The notes below the pieces were generated by a model. It was not told where the DNA came from and made no database searches. It saw nothing but the letters and a program-made list of their open reading frames with translations. A DNA stretch of 64,000 nt from Octopus sinensis (lineage: Eukaryota), in assembly GCF_006345805.1 (NCBI RefSeq), contig NC_042999.1, positions 91,140,001 through 91,204,000 of the forward strand, read 5' to 3'. The position numbers were made by a program, and so were the translations under genes. Shown piece by piece: positions 42,688-63,722 of this stretch. Numbering within the stretch: position 1 is the first letter of the stretch; the number at the start of each line of letters is the position of its first letter.

Positions 42688-44399
42688 ATGAGCATCCGAC
42701 TAAAATGGAATAAGTCTAACCATTTATCATTGCCATTGGATTTGATTATTATCAGTTGTTTCAAATAAAGTGTATTGGATCGCGTAATATTCCCAGCATT
42801 CAATCAACCTTAAACATCCAGAGGTTCACAAGAATTAAAGATAGTAAATACTATATTATACCATCGGCACTTATAGTACAAAAGCAAGTGCGGAATCACT
42901 AAATAGGAAGTGATTGGTCTAACACATATAACAAGGGGATTTTAGCAATGCGGAGCTACTAGATTAATCCGGTTTTGGACGTGATACTGATATTAAATTC
43001 TAAATCTGTGGGCGCTTATTCGTGCTATAAGTGGTAATCTCTGAAACATGGACTTGAATTTATGCCAAAGCGAAACAAATATCTTAAGGTTCGCTCAGCG
43101 ATTGATTCATCATTATAATAGCTTTGTTATTTCCTCCGTGACTAAAAGAACTATTCACTTTGTAAGCAGGCATGACCATGATTGTTTCACTCAGACAGTT
43201 GTGGACAAAATAAATGAAAGAAAATTGTGTCTTGTAGCTGTTTACTTGAATACAACCTCCTTTGATCTTTGTCTCAATATCTTAATGACTAGATCGTACA
43301 AAATTCTCTTGTGGTTTTATTGAAAAACAGTTATTATTGCCTGTTTTGTATTGAGAATTATTTTCCAAGCGACAGAATCTGATATATCACAACAACCACC
43401 ACTACTACTATAACAACAACAACAACAATAGTAATAATAATCACCGTTACACGCTCATATATATATAATAAAATGTATTCAGAACTGTTAAAAACGCGCA
43501 GGGAGATGAAAGAAAATTATATAAAATCGAGAGTAGATATAAAAAAATCTCGCACAATACATTAAAATATATTAATAATCTTTTTAAATTCTGGAAAATA
43601 ATTAAATGAATATATTATACACAGATGTAAACTAAAAGAGATATTGATAAAGCATAAAGAAAAATAATCAATCCATCGACTACTGTTGCGAAGTCTCAAC
43701 CTCTTCTTGGCTGCTGCTCAATGTATTGCCAACTGGAGTGCTTAAAAACGCTCTGAAGCGTATTTTACGTTAGAGAAGACTAAGAGCATCGTTCTTTCTT
43801 TAGGAACATCTACTTTGATATATCATTGATATTGAGTTTTATCTTCAGTAGCGATCTATCTTCTGTCTCATAAAACCCAGCCTATATCTTTTTATTCATC
43901 ATAGTTAAATTTCAGAATGCCGCATTTGTCTTCACAGTCACGTTGCTTGTTCGCAGAACAGGGAGCTACAATAAATTGTTGGCCTCACTCCCATTACTAT
44001 CACCTCATCGACCTAGAATATGAACAAAAGGGACGGCGCAAATAAATTGTTCACAAGAGTAAATAAATGAAAAATAAGAGCACAAATCGGCTCTTAATAC
44101 CACTCATATTACAGTTTAGCTTTCTGAGTCATCCACAATCGCATTGCTTTCCCCTCTGTAACTACAATGATAGACAATAGCACTCAGAGAACGTAAATCT
44201 CCGCCAGGGCAACACCAACGTCATCGTTTTTTATTGCCCACAAGAGGTTAAATATAAAGGTTATACATTACAAAGACAATACAAAACATAAAATCGAGGA
44301 AACAAAATTACAAAAAGAAATCGAGCAAGGAAGAAAAATTAAAAAAGAAACGAATGAAATTATGAAAATGATAAAATGAGGCGCAATGTCCACTCGGCC

Positions 44400-45600
44400 C
44401 CCAAAGTCGAGTGGTTACATTTAGACATCATCTTGGACAGTTTTTCTCTTTTTTTTTCCCTTTTTTTAAACAAAAAGTTCACATATTCATCATTTTTTAT
44501 ATTGTTCATATCATCCATTATATTTTTCTTTAAAATTTCTCAACTCTTCATATTCCACCAGCCCGTCAATCATAGTCACCAATACTCTATGTGAATCCAT
44601 GAATATTTCGTATCTTTCTTCATTCAAGAGAACACATATTTCATTCTCCATGAATTTCTCCCCGGGCAGCTTTACCCTTACAAATCCCTTCTACTTGGAT
44701 GTTCTCCTTTCTACCTCTACACACTTTACGCAGTACTCTAAGAATGTCTTATGTTTAAATTCTTTCTCTCTTGGCTCTGTCTCTACTGTATGTGTATGCT
44801 CGAGTTTAGGCGGCTCCTTACTTTCTGGGGCATCCTCTCAGTTTCTGCTGCTGGTCCCTGCGAATGCTCTCTTTATTTCGCCTTGTTTCCTTTTGATGCT
44901 GACAAACACGTCAATCCCCTTCATTGCCGCTTTCGTTCTGTCTTCCTTCGTCTTTACTTCTTCTGCATCTCTGACACACTTTGTATCGCTCTTGCCATCT
45001 CCGTCTTTCTTTCGATTTGTACTCCAATCTCCACTTCTTGGTCCCTTTCCACAGTCTTCCCACTCGGAGGATGCTCATATCCGGGGCACCACATCCACAC
45101 ACGGCTTCCACCCAACACTCGCAACAATCGGGCCGACAACTCTCAGCAACCACCTCGAGGAATCCCCTCCCGCAATCTCCACCTGGCAGGGGATCGCTTC
45201 CACGTCCTCGAAAGTGGCAAAAGCCACAGCCCGATGCTCATCCCTCATCCCATTGGTCCCAACTCGGGATTCCCCCGGTGGAATCTTGAACAGCTGCCAC
45301 CAACCACCCCGTCTCCACCTCCGGCAGCACCTCACTACTCGAAACCGAACACCGCGCCTGTCCCCACACGCGGGCTGCAGCCCCAGCCCGTTGGAGCGCA
45401 GAATAGCGGCGGAACGCGAGGCTGACCCCTCCCCGGCAGCAAACCCCACCTCCACAGTGCCATACGCCCTCTTCGGCCCACGAATGCTGCCCCTTATTAG
45501 GGGTCCCGAGCACTCCCCCACACCAACCCGACAGGACCTCCATCCCACCGGTGGCGACCGCCCGCGTGCGGCTGACCATCGTCCCACAGCTCCCACCGCC
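44400..45600 (-). mobile_element. Degenerate gag-like ORF1 of a non-LTR element (L1/Tx1-like)
   Basis: Minus strand YGTVEVGFA, FATFEDVEAIPCQVEIAGG..EVVAESCRP and a degenerate zinc knuckle C-x2-C-x4-(H>R)-x4-C, followed by a charged low-complexity C-terminus with stops. No ORF2 follows. Confidence 0.5.
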
Positions 45601-45977
45601 GACCGTCACCTCCAGAGGGACCAGCCCCACTGCATCTCCCTCTCCCTGCACCAACTACATACTTCCCACGACATCGTCCACATTAACTCTCATCCACCCC
45701 ACCCCCACCGCAGCAGTCCCCGCACAGCTCCCCACAATGAAAAGCCAACCGCTTCACCCCAACAATGGGGAGAAAAACAGCAAAAAATCACAACAGCAAC
45801 AAGAACAACCACGCACGATTCGCCCCAACAACATCCAACAGCAACAAAAATAACTTCAACAATGGATAGTCCTAAACAGATTACCCTCAACAACCATTAT
45901 CTATCTGTCTATGTCTAACTATCATTACATATATATATATATATATATATATATAGTAGTTTAACGCAGGTATAATA

Positions 45978-46546
45978 TATAAGTTACGGGGACGTAACAA
46001 CACCAACATTGTCAAGCGATGGTGGGGGGGACAGACAGAGACACAAACAGCTATTTATCTCTCCTTCCTCCTTGTTATCACCATGCCAGACTACAGATCC
46101 TACCTTCTCACTCTTCACCAACGCCTAAAACTGCCTCTGCTTACTCCCTTCCACTGCTTTCAGTCGTCCATTAACCTCTCTTTACTCATTTTCAAAAAAA
46201 CTTTTGAAGAGAAAAAAGAAAGGAAGAGTCGCCATGATAGATCGTTAGCCACTACACACATTTTCTCTCCTTGTTTCTCTCCTAGTTTTTTGTGTGTCCC
46301 TTTCTGTAGAAGAGCGTAGGCTCGAAACGTAAAATACTTTTTCTATTTCTGAGCGTTTACTAAACATCTGTTTGTTTTATACACCACTGCCTTCGTCTTT
46401 TGATTATCTCGTAAACTCTCCCTATATATATACAACGTTTTTCTTTCAGCTTCAGTCTACTAACTCCACTCACAAGGCTTTGGTCGGCCCGAGGCTACAG
46501 TAGAAGACTGAACCCGGAACCATGTGTTTAGGAAGGAAGCTACTTA
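45978..46546 (-). mobile_element. SINE family B interrupted by a Penelope-type repeat fragment
   Basis: SINE middle at 45978-46060 (AAGTTACGGGGACGTAA..TTGTCAAGCGATGG) and SINE head at 46435-46546 (TTCTTTCAG..GAACCCGGAACCATGTG), with unrelated sequence between them. Confidence 0.7.
46065..46430 (+). mobile_element. Penelope-type terminal-repeat fragment with a degenerate hammerhead
   Basis: CTGTAGA-A-GAGC[GTAG]GCTC-GAAAC-GT...GCGT-T at 46304-46357. Homologous to 38135-38290. Confidence 0.6.
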
Positions 46547-47674
46547 TATATATATATTCTGTGCATATATGCATATCTGTGTTTTGTGCGGTGTTTTGTT
46601 GTGTGCAACATTTGAATATATATGTGCGCACGCACATATTTTAAAGAACTTTAAAATTTTTAAATTTTTAAAATTCAATTTGCTCTTTTTGATGACACAT
46701 TATTAGTGTGTTCATTCATTTCCTATTTCTTTCTTTTCTACTGACCCTTATTCATGCATAATGTACATGGTAGAATTATAACGAAAGATCTTGTATTAGG
46801 CACTACATCATTAATACTACTTAATATTGTTCAGAAAAACTGAAATTTACCATATCTGGTCTGATAAAAAGGATAATAGGTAAGTCGACCTTCAGGGAAT
46901 GTAAACTCAGAACGGCAAGATAGCGCTAACACTAAGTCCTGCTGGCTAACGATTCTGCCAACTCTCCGCCTTGAATAGGCTATAATAACAACATCAATAC
47001 ACGATTCGGTTTTTCTTTGAATAATTATCGTAGAATGCCTACTTGAGCTCGTTCTTAAAAAAGCAAAATTCATGTAGAAGCTATCTTACTTACTCCACAC
47101 CTCGATATCTTACTTACTCCACACCTTGTTAAAAAAGAAGGGATATCTCTTAATATGTTCAATAGGAGAAACTAGCTCTAATTAATAACATTATTCTTCG
47201 ACAAAATTATAATCAAAAATTATCTATAGCACATTTATATAAACAATTATTATATCACTCATTCATATCACTTTTTCTAACTGTCATTTGACTTATTCAA
47301 TACAGAAAAGATTTTAGTTGACCTTGCACGACTGCTACTAAGCTTAGTACATGAACATGGACCAATCAATTGTACATCGACGGATAGCATTCTGAGCCAC
47401 ATTGCTAATTTTAAAACACTGTTTTTATAACAATAGTCGGATTAGACGTAATTCGTGACATGTTTCCTTATAGAGTCTTGAAAATCTAATGTGAAACCGG
47501 TCAAATGATTTCTTATATTTTAAAATTCAGTTTAATCTAATTATTCTAATAGATTCTGTGCATTTTCAACTTCAGTTCCTCTACTCCTCCGCTTGTTTGG
47601 ATTAACAACATTTTTCTGTCTGTATGTATATAACATTATAACTCAGTTCCTATGACTTTAATAGTTGTAGGCGC

Positions 47675-48413: not shown

Positions 48414-50119
48414 TGAGCATCCGACTAAAATGGAATAAGTCTAACCATTTATCATTGCCATTGGATTTGATTATTATCAGTTGTTTCAAATAAAGTGTAT
48501 TGGATCGCGTAATATTCCCAGCATTCAATCAACCTTAAACATCCAGAGGTTCACAAGAATTAAAGATAGTAAATACTATATTATACCATCGGCACTTATA
48601 GTACAAAAGCAAGTGCGGAATCACTAAATAGGAAGTGATTGGTCTAACACATATAACAAGGGATTTTAGCAATGCGGAGCTACTAGATTAATCCGGTTTT
48701 GGACGTGATACTGATATTAAATTCTAAATCTGTGGGCGCTTATTCGTGCTATAAGTGGTAATCTCTGAAACATGGACTTGAATTTATGCCAAAGCGAAAC
48801 AAATATCTTAAGGTTCGCTCAGCGATTGATTCATCATTATAATAGCTTTGTTATTTCCTCCGTGACTAAAAGAACTATTCACTTTGTAAGCAGGCATGAC
48901 CATGATTGTTTCACTCAGACAGTTGTGGACAAATAAATGAAAGAAAATTGTGTCTTGTAGCTGTTTACTTGAATACAACCTCCTTTGATCTTTGTCTCAA
49001 TATCTTAATGACTAGATCGTACAAAATTCTCTTGTGGTTTTATTGAAAAACAGTTATTATTGCCTGTTTTGTATTGAGAATTATTTTCCAAGCGACAGAA
49101 TCTGATATATCACAACAACCACCACTACTACTATAACAACAACAACAACAATAGTAATAATAATCACCGTTACACGCTCATATATATATAATAAAATGTA
49201 TTCAGAACTGTTAAAAACGCGCAGGGAGATGAAAGAAAATTATATAAAATCGAGAGTAGATATAAAAAAATCTCGCACAATACATTAAAATATATTAATA
49301 ATCTTTTTAAATTCTGGAAAATAATTAAATGAATATATTATACACAGATGTAAACTAAAAAGATATTGATAAAGCATAAAGAAAAATAATCAATCCATCG
49401 ACTACTGTTGCGAAGTCTCAACCTCTTCTTGGCTGCTGCTCAATGTATTGCCAACTGGAGTGCTTAAAAACGCTCTGAAGCGTATTTTACGTTAGAGAAG
49501 ACTAAGAGCATCGTTCTTTCTTTAGGAACATCTACTTTGATATATCATTGATATTGAGTTTTATCTTCAGTAGCGATCTATCTTCTGTCTCATAAAACCC
49601 AGCCTATATCTTTTTATTCATCATAGTTAAATTTCAGAATGCCGCATTTGTCTTCACAGTCACGTTGCTTGTTCGCAGAACAGGGAGCTACAATAAATTG
49701 TTGGCCTCACTCCCATTACTATCACCTCATCGACCTAGAATATGAACAAAAGGGACGGCGCAAATAAATTGTTCACAAGAGTAAATAAATGAAAAATAAG
49801 AGCACAAATCGGCTCTTAATACCACTCATATTACAGTTTAGCTTTCTGAGTCATCCACAATCGCATTGCTTTCCCCTCTGTAACTACAATGATAGACAAT
49901 AGCACTCAGAGAATGTAAATCTCCGCCAGGGCAACACCAACGTCATCGTTTTTTTATTGCCCACAAGAGGTTAAATATAAAGGTTATACATTACAAAGAC
50001 AATACAAAACATAAAATCGAGGAAACAAAATTACAAAAAGAAATCGAGCAAGGAAGAAAAATTAAAAAAGAAACGAATGAAATTATGAAAATGATAAAAT
50101 GAGGCGCAATGTCCACTCG

Positions 50120-51330
50120 GCCCCAAAGTCGAGTGGTTACATTTAGACATCATCTTGGACAGTTTTTCTCTTTTTTTTTCCCTTTTTTAAAACAAAAAGT
50201 TCACATATTCATCATTTTTTATATTGTTCATATCATCCATTATATTTTTCTTTAAAATTTCTCAACTCTTCATATTCCACCAGCCCGTCAATCATAGTCA
50301 CCAATACTCTATGTGAATCCATGAATATTTCGTATCTTTCTTCATTCAAGAGACACATATTTCATTCTCCATGAATTTCTCCCCGGGCAGCTTTACCCTT
50401 ACAAATCCCTTCTACTTGGATGTTCTCCTTTCTACCTCTACACACTTTACGCAGTACTCTAAGAATGTCTTATGTTTAAATTCTTTCTCTCTTGGCTCTG
50501 TCTCTACTGTATGTGTATGCTCGAGTTTAGGCGGCTCCTTACTTTCTGGGGCATCCTCTCAGTTTCTGCTGCTGGTCCCTGCGAATGCTCTCTTTATTTC
50601 GCCTTGTTTCCTTTTGATGCTGACAAACACGTCAATCCCCTTCATTGCCGCTTTCGTTCTGTCTTCCTTCGTCTTTACTTCTTCTGCATCTCTGACACAC
50701 TTTGTATCGCTCTTGCCATCTCCGTCTTTCTTTCGATTTGTACTCCAATCTCCACTTCTTGGTCCCTTTCCACAGTCTTCCCACTCGGAGGATGCTCATA
50801 TCCGGGGCACCACATCCACACACGGCTTCCCACCCAACACTCGCAACAATCGGGCCGACAACTCTCAGCAACCACCTCGAGGGAATCCCCTCCCGCAATC
50901 TCCACCTGGCAGAGGATCGCTTCCACGTCCTCGAAAGTGGCAAAAGCCACAGCCCGATGCTCATCCCTCATCCCATTGGTCCCAACTCGGGATTCCCCCG
51001 GTGGAATCTTGAACAGCTGCCACCAACCACCCCGTCTCCACCTCCGGCAGCACCTCACTACTCGAAACCGAACACCGCGCCTGTCCCCACACGCGGGCTG
51101 CAGCCCCAGCCCGTTGGAGCGCAGAATAGCGGCGGAACGCGAGGCTGACCCCTCCCCGGCAGCAAACCCCACCTCCACAGTGCCATACGCGCCCTCTTCG
51201 GCCCACGAATGCTGCCCCTTATTAGGGGTCCCGAGCACTCCCCCACACCAACCCGACAGGACCTCCATCCATCCCACCGGTGGCGACCGCCCGCGTGCGG
51301 CTGACCATCGTCCCACAGCTCCCACCGCCG
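50120..51330 (-). mobile_element. Degenerate gag-like ORF1 (duplicate of 44400-45600)
   Basis: ORF 50675-51325 (-) contains GTVEVGFA and RPDCCECWVGSRVWMWCP. Confidence 0.5.
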
Positions 51331-51652
51331 ACCGTCACCTCCAGAGGGACCAGCCCCACTGCATCTCCCTCTCCCTGCACCAACTACATACTTCCCACGA
51401 CATCGTCCACATTAACTCTCATCCACCCCACCCCCACCGCAGCAGTCCCCGCACAGCTCCCCACAATGAAAAGCCAACCGCTTCACCCCAACAATGGGAG
51501 AAAACAGCAAAAAATCACAACAGCAACAAGAACAACCACGCACGATTCGCCCCAACCAACATCCAACAGCAACAAAAATAACTTCAACAATGATAGTCCT
51601 AAACAGATTACCCTCAACAACCATTATCTATCTGTCTATGTCTAACTATCAT

Positions 51653-51688
<36 letters not shown>

Positions 51689-51784
51689 TTAACGCAGGTA
51701 TAATATATAAGTTACGGGGACGTAAACAACACCAACATTGTCAAGCGATGGTGGGGGGGACAGACAGAGACACACAAACAGCTA

Positions 51785-52170
51785 TTTATCTCTCCTTCCT
51801 CCTTGTTATACCACCATGCCAGACTACAGATCCTACCTTCTCACTCTTCACCAACGCCTAAAACTTGCCTCTGCTTACTCCCTTCCCACTGCTTTCAGTC
51901 GTCCATTAACCTCTCTTTACTCATTTTCAAAAAAACTTTTGAAGAGAAAAAAGAAAGGAAGAGTCGCCATGATAGATCGTTAGCCACTACACACATTTTT
52001 TCTCTCCTTGTTTCTCTCCTAGTTTTTTGTGTGTCCCTTTCTGTAGAAGAGCGTAGGCTCGAAACGTAAAATACTTTTTCTATTTCTGAGCGTTATACTA
52101 ATACATCTGTTTGTTTTATACACCACCTGTCTTCGTCTTTTGATTATCTCGTAAACTCTCCCTATATATA
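51785..52170 (+). mobile_element. Penelope-type repeat fragment with a degenerate hammerhead (duplicate of 46065-46430)
   Basis: CTGTAGAAGAGCGTAGGCTCGAAACG at 52041-52066. Confidence 0.6.
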
Positions 52171-52409
52171 TACAACGGTTTTCTTTCAGCTTCAGTCTAC
52201 TAAATCCACTCACAAGGCTTTGGTCGGCCCGAGGCTACAGTAGAAGACTGAACCCGGAACCATGTGTTTAGGAAGGAAGCTACTTATATATATATATGTC
52301 TGTGCATATATGCATATCTCTGTGTTTGTGCGTGTTTTGTTGTGTGCACATGTGAATATATATGTGCGCACGCACATGTGTATATGTGTGTGCGAGTGTG
52401 TGTATTTGT

Positions 52410-54256: not shown

Positions 54257-56301
<2,045 letters not shown>

Positions 56302-60439: not shown

Positions 60440-61870
60440 ATGAGCTCACTTATTGAAGACCCTGAGATACCTTTAGTCGGCATGAATAACCACAAGTGTC
60501 GTTCGTATTCAAGCACCAACAATGAAGATATCAAGGCCAATTCTCACAGTATTACCAGCATCCGTCGATACGGAACAGTTGGTAAGCGCTTGGCTATTCG
60601 GCGCGAGCTTTATCAGAAGAGACGCCGTATGGGCGATATCTCCTTGTTGTTGGCTACCTTCGGAACCGTCCTCATGATGATTGAACTCGAGTTGTGCCTT
60701 TTTTCCGTCATTGATAAAGCTTCAGCAATGTCGTTCTTTGTCAAGGTCGGCATTTCAGTCTCCACAGTTAGCCTTTTAGTGGTGCTGGCTCTTTACCATC
60801 GGGTTGACATTCAATTGTTTACCATAGACAATTGTGTTGATGATTGGTGTCTCGCTATCGATAGGACTCGTGTGCTCAAAATAGGAATAGAAATGTTAAT
60901 ATGTAGTGTGCACCCGATTCCTGGCACTTATATGAGCAGCAACCGCCAAGAAAACGCTGCACCTCAATCTTCTTTAGCATCGTCCACAATATCCTCAGGG
61001 ACTCTAAACTCATCTGCTCTAACTTTCGAGATTCCTTCGTATGATGTATTCCTAGCTCTACCCATGTTCTTGAGGGTGTACCTTTTGTGTCGAAGTGTTA
61101 TGCTGCATAGCAGACTTTACGAAGATGCTTCTTCTCAGAGTCTTGGTGCACTTAATCGAGTCCACTTCAATTTTGCCTTCATTTTTAAATCTTTTATGTC
61201 TCTACATGCTGAGCATGTGCTTATTATGATAACTATTATAGCATTCCTCATTAGTAGTTGGTGTTTGCGTCTTTGTGAAATCCAATTTCGTCCGACAGAA
61301 GCTACAATGTTGAATTCAATGTGGCTTATTGCTGTCACATTTCTATCGGTCGGTTATGGAGATATAGTACCCATATCATATTGCGGTCGGGGTATAGCTG
61401 TCATTACAGGAATCATAGGTGCTGGCTGCACCGCTTTAGTGGTAGCCGTCTTAGCGCGGAAACTAGAATTAACACGAGCCGAGAAATATGTGCATGATTT
61501 CGTCATAGATGCAGATCTGAACAAACGAATCAAACACGAAGCGGCTAATGTGCTAAGAGCTGGTTGGTTAATCTACAAGGCCAATAAAAACAACGCTTCA
61601 AAGCGTGCCATCAACGAACACCAACGTAAGATGTTACGCGCCATCTACCACATTCGTGAGCGGAAAGCACAACAACGAAGATTGCTGGATAGTACAGTAA
61701 CGCTTGTTGAAGTGAACAAAGGCCAGTCAGATATGTCTCTTTATATAGACCAATTACGTAATAAACAACAAGCTATGGAAGAACAAATTCTGAACATTAA
61801 ATGTGCAGTCGGAGGAATACACGAGAAGTTAGATGGACTATATTATATCTTGAATAAACCAACATTATGA
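60440..61870 (+). CDS. KCNN: Small-conductance Ca2+-activated K+ channel (SK/KCNN-like), intronless, 476 aa
   Basis: Uninterrupted ORF with SK hallmarks: GKRLAIRRELYQKRRRMGD (HA helix), LFTIDNCVDDW, HPIPG, LPMFLRVYL (S4), DASSQSLGALN (S4-S5), pore TFLSVGYGDIVP, S6 GAGCTALVVAVLARKLELTRAEK, a calmodulin-binding domain (AANVLRAGWLIYK...HQRKML) and a C-terminal coiled coil. Purine at -3 of the ATG, in-frame TAG at 60419. Confidence 0.96.
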   Translation: MSSLIEDPEIPLVGMNNHKCRSYSSTNNEDIKANSHSITSIRRYGTVGKRLAIRRELYQKRRRMGDISLLLATFGTVLMMIELELCLFSVIDKASAMSFFVKVGISVSTVSLLVVLALYHRVDIQLFTIDNCVDDWCLAIDRTRVLKIGIEMLICSVHPIPGTYMSSNRQENAAPQSSLASSTISSGTLNSSALTFEIPSYDVFLALPMFLRVYLLCRSVMLHSRLYEDASSQSLGALNRVHFNFAFIFKSFMSLHAEHVLIMITIIAFLISSWCLRLCEIQFRPTEATMLNSMWLIAVTFLSVGYGDIVPISYCGRGIAVITGIIGAGCTALVVAVLARKLELTRAEKYVHDFVIDADLNKRIKHEAANVLRAGWLIYKANKNNASKRAINEHQRKMLRAIYHIRERKAQQRRLLDSTVTLVEVNKGQSDMSLYIDQLRNKQQAMEEQILNIKCAVGGIHEKLDGLYYILNKPTL

Positions 61871-61934
61871 GACAAAAAATGAAAGGGATGTGCGAAGAAT
61901 AAAGGAAAACAAAAACGAGGCTGTGTTAACTCTG

Positions 61935-61981
<47 letters not shown>

Positions 61982-62939
61982 ATATGGATCCTAAAAACAA
62001 TATTCTATTTATATTCATAGTTTTTATTAAAATAAATCTCAAAGGAAGGAAAACAGAATTTCCTCAGCAATAGGTTCAAAACTCAGATTCTAAATTCATG
62101 ATGAGACTGAAGTACGAAAGATTTTACATATGAATGGAATAGAATATGTAAAAGAAAGAAAAAAGAATGAATATTAATCTGAAAGAAATGACGTATAATA
62201 ATGAAGTTTGAATCATGAATTTAACTGTTTACTACTGAGTTGCAGATACTATCTACTGTTTATCTTTTTTGTAGCGATCGTAAGCGGTCAGCATGTGTTG
62301 AATGCAATATAGACATAAGGTTTCATAATTGCTATGTTATAAAAACAGATGAATGGGTGTAAAAATGCTTTTTTTAATTTGGATATTGTTTAAGCACAAC
62401 TATTGCCTTTTAATATATGTTTAACTCCATAGTACATACATTCTACGTATGTGAGTATATACATAATTAAATATCTATAGAGATGTTTATATATATGCGC
62501 GTGCGTGTGTGTATGTGAGTGTGCGTGCATGTGCGAGAACGATTATATATACACAATCCTTCTATGTATATTAATGAGTGTATATATGTATACATACATA
62601 TATATGAGCGCATGTGTGCGTGCGTATGCGTGTATGTGTAATTATATATACATATATCTATCTAAGAATATCAATATGTATGTGTATATATGTGTGTACA
62701 TTTATATATACATATATACATATGTTTTTATTTATATATAAAACAAAAACATTAACCGAATAAAGGAATCAATACACGAAGTCGAGTTTAACATTTATTT
62801 TATATTCAGTTGACAAATTATTCGAATAGTCAGCAAAGTAAGGCCTTCGAACTCTGGTAAAATTTCACATGTGTTTCCTATATTATTACGTTCGGGAAAA
62901 TGTTATTGCAATGAGTGAAGTAGAAATATTCTTTTCTAC

Positions 62940-63092
62940 TCTAGGCACAAGGCCCGAAATTTTGTGTGAAGTGGGGTCAGTCGATTAAATGGACCCCAGT
63001 ACTTAATTTATCGAACTCGAAAGGATGAAAGGCAAAGTCGACCTGGGCGGAATTTGAATTCAAAACGTAAAGACAGACGAAATACCGCTAAG
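62940..63092 (-). mobile_element. SINE family C (5'-truncated)
   Basis: GAAAGGATGAAAGGCAAAGTCGACCTGGGCGGAATTTGAATTCAAAACGTAAAGACAGACGAAATACCGCTAAG. Confidence 0.85.
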
Positions 63093-63116
63093 AAACCGCA
63101 TAAGAAGCATTGAATA

Positions 63117-63722
63117 AGGACGCGAGCTGGCAGAAATGTTAGCACGCCGGGCGAAATGCTTAGCGGTATTTCGTCTGCAGCTACGTTTTGTGTTCAAATT
63201 CCGCCGAGGTCGACTTTGCCTTTCATCCTTCGGAGCCGATAAATTAAGCTAAGTACCAGTTACGCACTGGGGTCGATATAATCGACTTAATCCGTTAGTC
63301 TGTCCTTGTTTGTCCTCTCTATGTTTAGCCACTCTTGGGTAGTAAACAAATAGGTATTTCGTCTGCAGCTAAGTTTTGTGTTCAAATTCCGCCGAGGTCG
63401 ACTTTACCTTTCATCTTTTCGGGGTCGATTAAATAAGTACCAGTTACGCACTGGGGTCGATATAATCGACTTAATCCGTTTGTCTGTCCTTGTTTGTCCT
63501 CTCTGTGTTTAGCCACTTGTGGGTAGTAAACAAATAGGTATTTCGTCTGCAGCTACGTTTTGTGTTCAAATTCCGCCGAGGTCGACTTTACCTTTCATCT
63601 TTTCGGGGTCGATTAAATAAGTACCAGTTACGCACTGGGATCGATATAATCGACTTAATCCGTTTGTCTGTCCTTGTTCGTCCCCTCTATATTTAGCCCC
63701 TTGTGAGCAATAAAGAAATAAG
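63117..63722 (+). mobile_element. SINE family C with an internal tandem triplication (~186-bp units)
   Basis: One complete head, then units starting GGTATTTCGTCTGCAGCT at 63165, 63353 and 63537. Confidence 0.92.

What the first reader, a model, noticed from the sequence alone, without database searches (positions are those of the whole stretch)
60440..61870. Intact, intronless, divergent SK-channel paralog: candidate functional retrogene
Seen: the whole channel from the N-terminal EDPEIPLVG motif to the coiled coil is in one 1431-bp ORF with no stops or frameshifts, in a region where every TE ORF has decayed. Known: characterised SK/KCNN genes (vertebrate KCNN1-4, Drosophila SK) are multi-exon. 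Inference: retroposition of a spliced SK mRNA (LINE RTs are abundant here) followed by purifying selection and divergence, possibly giving a lineage-specific Ca2+-activated K+ channel. No poly(A) remnant or TSD is visible, which suggests the event is old. An AATAAA lies at about 62031.
Basis: partly seen in the sequence, partly recalled or inferred. Interest (0 to 1): 0.75.

Follow-up and report, generated by a model that had tools for sequence, protein, structure and literature searches.

The report
Ancient single-exon octopus SK channel
This is an intact, already annotated octopus gene for a calcium-activated (SK-type) potassium channel whose whole coding sequence sits in one exon, but clam-like and worm-like relatives share that layout, so it is an old gene lineage and not a young octopus-specific retrogene.

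Summary
Window 60440-61870 (+) is one uninterrupted 476-aa ORF with full SK/KCNN architecture: SK_channel TM domain, GYGD pore and calmodulin-binding domain. Human SK2 is the best solved relative (E 6e-108).

The genome does contain a conventional multi-exon SK gene: at least 7 exons over more than 207 kb on C12, plus unplaced contigs C8068 and C8737. That gene is not the window gene's recent parent. An AU test rejects grouping them (p 5e-5).

The window gene is the coleoid ortholog of a short (~460 aa) SK paralog lineage found across Lophotrochozoa. Genomic contigs of bivalve-type and annelid-type members carry the same complete single-exon CDS and the same N-terminal motif. By parsimony, the intron loss or retroposition predates the mollusc-annelid split.

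The protein is under strong constraint. It keeps 100 of 103 universally invariant positions, and pore and CaMBD are each 96% identical to cuttlefish.

It is already annotated in O. vulgaris, O. bimaculoides, Argonauta and Sepia.

The one distinctive trait is a coleoid-specific Ser/Ala/Pro-rich insertion in the S3-S4 loop, which in human SK2 forms the pore canopy.

Direct RNA evidence and dN/dS could not be obtained.

The parts
60440..61870 (+). Complete single-exon CDS (476 aa plus stop) of a short SK/KCNN-type Ca2+-activated K+ channel subunit
   Evidence: ORF. Pfam domains. Human SK2 E 6e-108. Identical or near-identical proteins annotated in O. vulgaris, O. bimaculoides and Argonauta.
60440..60484 (+). 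Conserved N-terminal motif (MSSLIEDPEIPLVGM), which fixes the start codon
   Evidence: The same motif opens the ORFs of bivalve-type and annelid-type contigs L019-L023 and of abalone and clam proteins.
60587..60934 (+). SK_channel domain (S1-S3 transmembrane region, aa 50-165)
   Evidence: PF03530, E 4e-38. Confident helices in the AF2 model.
60935..61042 (+). Extracellular S3-S4 loop with a coleoid-specific Ser/Ala/Pro-rich insertion (aa 166-201; one NSS sequon at aa 190)
   Evidence: About 18 aa longer than in other molluscs and about 70 aa longer in cuttlefish. Sixteen of the 27 Argonauta differences fall here. pLDDT is below 50. The homologous loop forms the pore canopy in human KCa2.2 (PMC12006403).
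61043..61231 (+). S4 and S4-S5 linker (S45A/S45B region, aa 202-264)
   Evidence: 92% identical to the cuttlefish-type ortholog and 71-73% to abalone and clam. No differences from Argonauta.
61232..61465 (+). Pore module S5-P-S6 (aa 265-342), with the GYGD selectivity filter at 61352-61363
   Evidence: PF07885. G305, G307 and D308 are invariant in a 34-sequence alignment. 96% identical to the cuttlefish-type ortholog.
61508..61723 (+). Calmodulin-binding domain (aa 357-428)
   Evidence: PF02888, E 7e-20. Matches solved SK2 CaMBD/CaM complexes such as 1g4y, E 7e-21. 96% identical to the cuttlefish-type ortholog.
61724..61867 (+). C-terminal coiled-coil helix (aa 429-476)
   Evidence: One long helix, 388-472, with pLDDT 82-93 in the AF2 model.
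61898..62036 (+). Candidate 3' UTR segment holding two AATAAA hexamers (61898-61903, 62031-62036) and a (TA)n microsatellite
   Evidence: The hexamer count is not above chance, so the polyadenylation site is unproven.

Best explanation
The ORF is the octopus (coleoid) ortholog of an old, Lophotrochozoa-wide paralog of the SK/KCNN channel family. Members are about 450-480 aa, open with the MSxIIEDPxIPLVG motif, and carry the whole CDS in one exon.

The same genome keeps the slowly evolving, multi-exon canonical SK gene on another chromosome.

The short lineage most likely arose once, before molluscs and annelids diverged. The mechanism was retroposition of a spliced SK mRNA, or some other wholesale loss of all coding introns, followed by inheritance as an ordinary gene.

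The product is predicted to be a tetrameric, voltage-independent K+ channel subunit gated by Ca2+ through constitutively bound calmodulin. The S4-S5 linker, GYGD pore, S6 and CaMBD are all conserved.

On the coleoid stem the protein diverged quickly. Its extracellular S3-S4 loop, the element that forms the pore canopy and apamin site in human KCa2.2, became a long, disordered Ser/Ala/Pro-rich insertion. The outer vestibule therefore probably differs from vertebrate SK2, and with it the unitary conductance and toxin pharmacology.

Shown here: ORF, domains, phylogeny, single-exon relatives, constraint. Inferred: the retroposition mechanism, transcription, channel function, and the effect of the loop.
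For: - Full SK architecture and fold. Foldseek's top 20 hits are all KCa2.2/KCa3.1, E to 1e-21.
- Canonical gene in the same genome: the C8068 exon has clean AG and GT sites. It is 68-74% identical to arthropod and vertebrate SKs, 52-59% to the short lineage and 38% to the window protein. Further exons lie on C12 at 53.02-53.23 Mb.
- With abalone SK as query, the best hit in this genome is the window gene (57%, full length).
- Trees: the window clade sits inside the molluscan short-SK clade (100/99) and the canonical clade has 100/100 support. The AU test rejects window plus own canonical exon as one clade (p 5e-5).
- Complete single ORFs inside 3-7.7 kb genomic contigs, with up to 4.5 kb of flank, for bivalve-type (L019, L020) and annelid-type (L021-L023) orthologs.
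- The same assemblies also hold canonical SK exons with conserved boundaries.
- Constraint: 100 of 103 universally invariant positions are kept. Pore and CaMBD are each 96% identical to the cuttlefish-type ortholog, against 36% in the loop. Only 1% of neutral simulations stay stop-free. Argonauta has 2 differences in 227 core residues against 16 in the 36-aa loop.
- Annotated orthologs exist in four coleoids. O. bimaculoides has four accessions for one protein, which implies UTR transcript variants.
- About a dozen small, probably RNA assemblies from several studies hold at least 87% of the locus.
Against: - The taxonomic identity of the metagenome contigs is inferred only from their position in my trees.
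- The lineage is not uniformly intronless. L032 and L033 carry one intron at about aa 170.
- The SK tree is unrooted. The order of events (short lineage from canonical, and retroposition rather than stepwise intron loss) is therefore inference.
- No poly(A) tract or target-site duplication survives.
- No codon-level dN/dS could be computed.
Confidence: 0.75

Rival explanations
1. Young or lineage-specific retrogene. A spliced mRNA of the cephalopod canonical SK gene was retroposed in the cephalopod lineage, then diverged quickly under selection.
For: The CDS is intronless while a multi-exon SK exists on another chromosome. A LINE reverse-transcriptase remnant lies 4.5 kb upstream. The cephalopod stem branch is long, 0.85-1.37.
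Against: The AU test rejects window clade plus own canonical exon as one clade (p 5e-5). The window protein is 54-57% identical to abalone short SK but only 38% to the octopus canonical exon. Orthologs with the same N-terminal motif and the same single-exon CDS occur in bivalve-type and annelid-type genomic contigs. The C17-type subfamily shows an equally long cephalopod stem, so fast divergence is not special to this gene.
Confidence: 0.03
2. Parallel intron loss. The short SK lineage is old but was ancestrally multi-exon. Cephalopods, heterodont bivalves and some annelids each lost all coding introns independently.
For: Two annelid-type relatives (L032, L033) have one intron, so intron content does vary within the lineage. 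Exon structures of most orthologs could not be inspected.
Against: The L032/L033 intron lies in the middle of a canonical exon (aa ~170, against canonical boundaries near 122 and 258). That fits a gain better than a retained ancestral intron. Three or more independent complete losses are far less parsimonious than one. Every full-length genomic contig recovered for the lineage except those two was uninterrupted.
Confidence: 0.1
3. No retroposition at all. The short lineage descends from an ancestrally intron-poor SK gene, and it is the canonical lineage that gained its introns.
For: The SK tree is unrooted. A third, mollusc-wide group of short SK-like genes (C17 and C1 types) is also single-exon in this genome and lies outside the canonical-plus-window-type grouping.
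Against: Both boundaries of the C8068 exon recur at identical positions and phase in dozens of canonical SK exons from diverse animals. Those introns are therefore at least as old as the protostomes. Characterised vertebrate and Drosophila SK genes are also multi-exon (established knowledge). Massive early intron gain is less likely than one retroposition.
Confidence: 0.1
4. Untranscribed or decaying relic. The ORF is open by chance or only recently released from selection.
For: No run on record as RNA was confirmed and no reads could be laid.
Against: Orthologs remain intact from octopus to cuttlefish, with 96% identity in pore and CaMBD. 100 of 103 invariant positions are kept, and only 1% of neutral simulations stay stop-free. 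RefSeq lists four transcript-level accessions for the O. bimaculoides ortholog. Many small, transcriptome-sized assemblies hold the locus.
Confidence: 0.02

Closest known systems
Human KCa2.2 (SK2, KCNN2), e.g. PDB 9vu9, 8v2g
   Same: Same 6-TM layout, GYGD filter, S4-S5 linker, S6 and calmodulin-binding helices. E 6e-108, about 44% identity over about 420 residues. The predicted gating mechanism (Ca2+ via bound calmodulin) is the same.
   Different: The coding sequence is single-exon, whereas KCNN2 is multi-exon. The protein is shorter (476 aa) with a different N-terminus. The S3-S4 loop lacks the Arg241, Phe244 and Tyr246 canopy tether described in PMC12006403. In its place is a longer, Ser-rich, predicted disordered insertion. 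The turret sequence before the pore helix also differs.
Canonical multi-exon SK gene of the same octopus genome (C12:53.02-53.23 Mb plus unplaced contigs C8068 and C8737)
   Same: Same family and same domain order. Both keep open exons and the pore signature.
   Different: The canonical gene has at least 7 coding exons over more than 207 kb. It is 68-78% identical to arthropod SKs exon by exon. It is only 38% identical to the window protein over the S3-S5 exon. The two fall in different, strongly supported clades.
Lophotrochozoan short 'SK-like' proteins (e.g. Haliotis cracherodii P0006, Saccostrea P0008, Mercenaria P0020, Lineus P0032, Paralvinella P0047)
   Same: Orthologous clade. Same length class, same N-terminal motif, and the same lineage signatures (DASSQSLGALNRIHFNF, KYVHDFVID). 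The CDS is single-exon wherever genomic contigs could be read.
   Different: Coleoid members sit on a long stem branch (54% identity to abalone against 64% for abalone versus clam). They carry the S3-S4 loop insertion, an Arg-to-Cys change in the DDW(R)LA motif, and a rewritten turret.
Classical processed retrogenes (mRNA-derived single-exon copies of multi-exon parents)
   Same: All coding introns of the parental type are absent. The location is unlinked to the multi-exon gene (C3 against C12).
   Different: No poly(A) remnant and no target-site duplication. It is not lineage-specific. The multi-exon gene in this genome is not its direct parent. If retroposition occurred, it predates the mollusc-annelid split.

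Membership tests
SK/KCNN (KCa2/KCa3) Ca2+-activated K+ channels | N-terminal SK_channel transmembrane domain (S1-S3), Pfam PF03530 | tested here: met
   E 4e-38, aa 50-165, full profile coverage 1-116 of 118.
SK/KCNN (KCa2/KCa3) Ca2+-activated K+ channels | K+-selective pore with a G[YF]GD signature between S5 and S6 | tested here: met
   PF07885 at aa 265-342. GYGD lies at aa 305-308, and G305, G307 and D308 are invariant across 34 SKs.
SK/KCNN (KCa2/KCa3) Ca2+-activated K+ channels | C-terminal calmodulin-binding domain directly after S6 | tested here: met
   PF02888, E 7e-20, aa 357-428. Matches solved SK2 CaMBD/calmodulin complexes (1g4y, 1kkd), E about 1e-20.
SK/KCNN (KCa2/KCa3) Ca2+-activated K+ channels | Overall fold of an SK subunit | tested here: met
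   The AF2 model (pLDDT 65) gives KCa2.2/KCa3.1 chains as the top 20 Foldseek hits, E to 1e-21. KCNQ follows at E 1e-6 or weaker.
SK/KCNN (KCa2/KCa3) Ca2+-activated K+ channels | Voltage-independent gating by Ca2+ through constitutively bound calmodulin | not testable with these tools
   Needs electrophysiology. Here it is only inferred from conserved S4-S5 linker and CaMBD residues.
Vertebrate-type KCa2 (apamin-sensitive small-conductance subtype) | S3-S4 beta-hairpin canopy tethered to the filter (Arg241, Phe244, Tyr246 in KCa2.2; PMC12006403) | tested here: not met
   The loop aligns poorly (10-11% identity) and lacks the RLAFSY-type motif. It is 18 aa longer and predicted to be disordered. 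The gene therefore belongs to the SK family but not to the vertebrate KCa2 subtype.
Lophotrochozoan short SK paralog lineage | Phylogenetic placement inside the clade, apart from canonical SKs | tested here: met
   Molluscan clade 100/99 and canonical clade 100/100. AU test p 5e-5 against the alternative.
Lophotrochozoan short SK paralog lineage | Length of about 450-480 aa, N-terminal MSxIIEDPxIPLVG motif, and single-exon CDS | tested here: met
   Single-exon CDS was seen in L019-L023. L032 and L033 are exceptions with one intron.
Processed retrogene | Lacks all coding introns of a multi-exon parental-type gene located elsewhere | tested here: met
   The ORF runs through all of the canonical exon junctions mapped on C12, C8068 and C8737.
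Processed retrogene | Poly(A) tract remnant and flanking target-site duplications | tested here: not met
   The longest A run is 6. The longest flanking direct repeat is 11 nt, and 100 of 200 shuffles reach that length. This is expected if the event is very old, so it is uninformative about origin.
Processed retrogene | Closest relative is the multi-exon gene of the same lineage (recent, lineage-specific copy) | tested here: not met

The most novel reading that the evidence does not exclude
A single retroposition more than 500 million years ago, in a lophotrochozoan ancestor, created a second, single-exon SK channel lineage. That lineage has coexisted ever since with the canonical multi-exon gene. 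In coleoid cephalopods it replaced the pore-canopy S3-S4 hairpin with a long, disordered, possibly glycosylated Ser/Ala/Pro-rich loop. The result would be a Ca2+-activated K+ channel whose unitary conductance and toxin pharmacology differ from classical SK. I found no paper in the searched library that describes this lineage or this loop change.
Probability: 0.35. Interest if true: 0.45.

Novelty: already known. Interest (0 to 1): 0.27.

Why it matters
Practically, it is a caution for retrogene calls. A single-exon copy sitting beside a multi-exon family member is not evidence of a recent or lineage-specific event.

Biologically, it shows that octopus, and apparently molluscs and annelids in general, carry at least two deeply separated SK channel lineages, plus a third mollusc-wide group of short SK-like genes. 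The short lineage has kept a one-exon coding sequence for hundreds of millions of years.

The coleoid-specific rebuilding of the S3-S4 loop gives a concrete and cheap electrophysiological hypothesis, because in human SK2 that loop sets the small conductance and the apamin site.

None of this is very surprising to a channel or genome specialist, and the gene itself is already annotated.

Tried and rejected
- **The look-up of encoding contigs**. I therefore could not read exon structures or DNA of the NCBI, ENA or Logan orthologs, and no codon-based dN/dS was possible.
- **Read laying**. There is no read-level evidence on transcription, UTR introns, transcript ends or A-to-I editing.
  - One local scan of the generic hexamer AATAAA used locus L099 as scope, and L099 physically spans them.
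  - My scripts masked them.
- **Joined model.** The exons of the canonical gene were handled one by one, by reference. The trees use only the single C8068 exon.
- **C8068 as a pseudogene.** Rejected. The 'stops' lie in intron sequence on either side of a clean exon.
- **C12 pieces as a divergent extra paralog.** Rejected once a canonical query was used: 75-78% identity to spider SK.
- **TSD, poly(A) and AATAAA.** Nothing above chance.
- **Literature.** Searches for an intronless or retrogene SK lineage in molluscs or lophotrochozoans found nothing relevant. One search was rejected for a term that was too short. A squid atlas mentions a 'cephalopod-duplicated' Kcnn paralogue expressed in optic-lobe cholinergic neurons, without saying which one (PMC12240821).
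- **Not run.** Complex prediction with calmodulin was not run, because no calmodulin sequence was available without joining exons and the CaMBD homology is already strong. The search of protein representatives was not used, because the family was not in doubt.
Full report
**1. Observation**

The window holds one uninterrupted ORF at 60440-61870 (+), with an ATG start and 476 aa. It is one of only eight ORFs of 200 aa or more in 64 kb. Its GC content is 0.42, against 0.28-0.31 in the flanks.

Pfam finds the three domains that define the family, in the right order:
- SK_channel, aa 50-165, E 4e-38
- Ion_trans_2, aa 265-342
- CaMBD, aa 357-428

Human SK2 is the best solved relative (E 6e-108, aligned over aa 38-461), followed by SK4. 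An AlphaFold2 model has mean pLDDT 65, which is moderate, as expected for one subunit of a tetramer. Its top 20 Foldseek hits are exclusively KCa2.2 and KCa3.1 chains.

It opens the orthologous ORFs of other phyla as well. The start codon is therefore genuine, and the CDS is complete in one exon.

The AATAAA at 62031 exists, and so does one at 61898, but the hexamer is not enriched. There is no poly(A) remnant and no target-site duplication above chance.

**2. Other SK genes in the genome**

The window is C3:91,140,001-91,204,000 of a 2.72-Gb assembly. Earlier notes of this scan call it an octopus. The window protein differs from the Octopus vulgaris entry by one residue.

A six-frame search with the window protein found these further loci:
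- two more uninterrupted SK-like ORFs, on C17 and C1, with full architecture at 37-40% identity
- a near-identical pair on C8615 and C9733, which lacks the CaMBD within the ORF
- exon-sized pieces on C12
- a piece on contig C8068

The C8068 piece is not a pseudogene. It is a clean internal exon with a polypyrimidine tract, an AG acceptor and a GT donor. It is 68-74% identical to arthropod and vertebrate SKs, 52-59% to the lophotrochozoan ~460-aa proteins, and 38% to the window protein.

A spider SK query then recovered the following:
- exons at C12:53,021,225, 53,132,934, 53,216,021, 53,224,479 and 53,228,701, at up to 78% identity
- C8068
- a weak small exon on C8737

The genome therefore has a canonical SK gene of at least 7 coding exons spread over more than 207 kb. 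Two of those exons sit on unplaced contigs.

They were searched and compared one at a time.

**3. Where the window gene belongs**

The word-based protein search returned close cephalopod proteins at 97% and 76% identity. Below those came a broad band of ~450-480-aa SK-like proteins at ~50-53% identity. They come from abalone, limpets, snails, oysters, clams, a nemertean, annelids, a brachiopod, a bryozoan and a flatworm.

With the abalone protein as query, the best hit in this genome is the window gene itself (57%, full length). The canonical gene scores lower.

Three trees agree. In the careful tree:
- The window clade nests inside the molluscan short-SK clade (100/99).
- The canonical clade has 100/100 support. 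It contains the octopus C8068 exon together with arthropod and vertebrate SKs.
- An AU test rejects a tree that keeps the window clade and the octopus canonical exon together (delta lnL 95.8, p-AU 5e-5).

The window gene is therefore not a cephalopod-specific copy of the cephalopod canonical SK.

**4. Age of the single-exon state**

I used the one metagenome-contig scan instead.

Five contigs of 3.0-7.7 kb carry complete 453-469-aa ORFs with the same N-terminal motif. They have up to 4.5 kb of non-coding flank, so they are genomic DNA and not transcripts.
- L019 and L020 fall among heterodont bivalves (100/100 with Mya and Mercenaria).
- L021, L022 and L023 fall among annelid sequences.

Two close relatives of L021 (L032, L033) have a single intron at about aa 170. 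That position lies in the middle of a canonical exon, which suggests a later gain.

Dozens of other contigs match only the segment equal to the C8068 exon. They share its acceptor position and its phase-2 donor in the final Arg codon. Those two canonical introns are therefore ancient.

Three assemblies hold both gene types:
- JAAUXW: L022 and L041
- JAAUYA: L021 and L042
- OREC01: L020 and L070

By parsimony, the short lineage already had a one-exon CDS before molluscs and annelids separated. Simultaneous absence of all canonical coding introns is what retroposition predicts, but at this age the mechanism remains an inference.

**5. Constraint and expression**

DNA of the cephalopod orthologs was not obtainable, so I could not compute dN/dS. 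Protein-level evidence for constraint is strong.
- 100 of the 103 positions invariant in ten non-cephalopod SKs are kept.
- Identity to the cuttlefish-type ortholog, by region:

| Region | Identity |
|---|---|
| Pore | 96% |
| CaMBD | 96% |
| S4-S5 | 92% |
| S3-S4 loop | 36% |

- Only 1% of neutral substitution simulations that reach the observed divergence stay free of stops, and that ignores indels.
- Argonauta differs at 27 positions. Sixteen are in the 36-aa loop and two are in the 227 core residues.

The exact window protein is in NCBI and UniRef. Its 90% cluster holds entries from three other coleoids:
- O. vulgaris: CAI9719690.1
- O. bimaculoides: XP_014770750.1, XP_014770751.1, XP_014770752.1 and XP_052822154.1, all one identical protein, which implies transcript variants differing only in UTRs
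- Argonauta hians: GAB1600642.1

The cuttlefish-type cluster includes an Acanthosepion pharaonis protein labelled KCNN3.

Twenty sequencing runs from nine studies hold at least 87% of the 2.4-kb locus. About a dozen of them are small, transcriptome-sized assemblies that the tool guesses to be RNA. That is suggestive, not proof.

Transcription, UTR structure and RNA editing therefore remain untested here.

**6. How it probably works**

All elements needed for SK-type gating align with human SK2:
- an S4 with few charges
- the S4-S5 linker (S45A/S45B) that receives the calmodulin N-lobe
- the GYGD filter
- S6
- the HA/HB calmodulin-binding helices
- a C-terminal coiled coil

I therefore expect a tetrameric, voltage-independent K+ channel opened by Ca2+ through bound calmodulin.

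The distinctive part is extracellular. [quoted passage not shown] Arg241, Phe244 and Tyr246 tether it to the filter. This sets the small unitary conductance and forms the apamin/UCL1684 site, and untethering it raises conductance (PMC12006403).

The window protein lacks that motif. It has instead a Ser-rich insertion of about 18 aa with one N-glycosylation sequon. The cuttlefish-type protein has about 70 extra residues there, including a poly-Ala run. The model predicts disorder between two short strands.

Non-cephalopod short SKs and insect SKs also lack the vertebrate tether motif. The absence of a vertebrate-type canopy is therefore probably general in invertebrates. What is coleoid-specific is the long insertion.

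A different outer vestibule, conductance and toxin pharmacology is a reasonable but untested inference.

**7. Context and verdict**

A wider tree resolves three groups:
- the canonical SKs
- the window-type short lineage
- a third, mollusc-wide group that holds the C17 and C1 paralogs

The window type is closer to the canonical group than to the third group (99* bipartition). Cephalopod members of both short subfamilies sit on long stems.

I found no paper describing this lineage. A squid single-cell atlas mentions an expressed 'cephalopod-duplicated' Kcnn paralogue, without identifying it (PMC12240821).

The finding is a real, functional-looking and already annotated gene. The retrogene idea survives only as a very old event shared across phyla. 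Interest is modest.

Noticed in passing
G000 C12:53,021,225-53,228,826, plus L006 (C8068:1995-2438) and L108 (C8737:55607-55702): The canonical multi-exon SK gene spans more than 207 kb on C12. Its large S3-S5 exon, and probably a small upstream exon, sit on short unplaced contigs. This looks like an assembly gap inside a giant intron.
   Followed up: partly
L002 (C17:29190608-29191900 +), L003 (C1:177369510-177370742 -), L004/L005 (C8615 and C9733): There are three more single-ORF SK-like paralogs. The C17 type has orthologs across molluscs (O. bimaculoides 99%, Argonauta 88%, abalone, chiton and bivalves about 50%). C1 is very divergent. The C8615/C9733 pair is near-identical (1 aa difference, probably haplotigs) and ends before the CaMBD, so it may continue in a second exon or be truncated.
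   Followed up: partly
protein P0146: A full-length C17-type SK-like protein lies on a 2.1-kb contig filed in NCBI as 'MAG: ion channel [Candidatus Thiodiazotropha endolucinida]'. This is almost certainly host-clam DNA mis-binned into a symbiont genome. It also shows that this subfamily is single-ORF in a bivalve.
   Followed up: no
L032:1440-4928 and L033:8155-10777: Annelid-type orthologs 87% identical to the intronless L021 carry one intron of 1.3-2.2 kb at about aa 170. No canonical SK has an intron at that position. It is a likely recent intron gain within an otherwise single-exon lineage.
   Followed up: partly
window 43778-46637 and 49500-52377: Two direct copies of a 2.9-kb GC-rich block (GC about 0.47, GC skew about -0.35) are 98.6% identical and lie 5.7 kb apart. 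They carry ORFs of 439 and 369 aa with no Pfam match.
   Followed up: partly
window 54460-55935 (+): A 491-aa open ORF has a partial RVT_1 reverse-transcriptase domain (profile positions 111-204). It is a LINE-type remnant 4.5 kb upstream of the channel gene.
   Followed up: no
window 63002-63720: Three tandem copies (period about 185-190 bp, 87-91% identical) of a SINE-like element lie here, with an inverted partial copy beside them. Diverged copies occur near 18.5, 39.2, 56.6 and 57.0 kb.
   Followed up: no
window 61939-61980: A (TA)n microsatellite of about 21 units lies 70 nt after the stop codon, inside the probable 3' UTR and between the two AATAAA hexamers.
   Followed up: no
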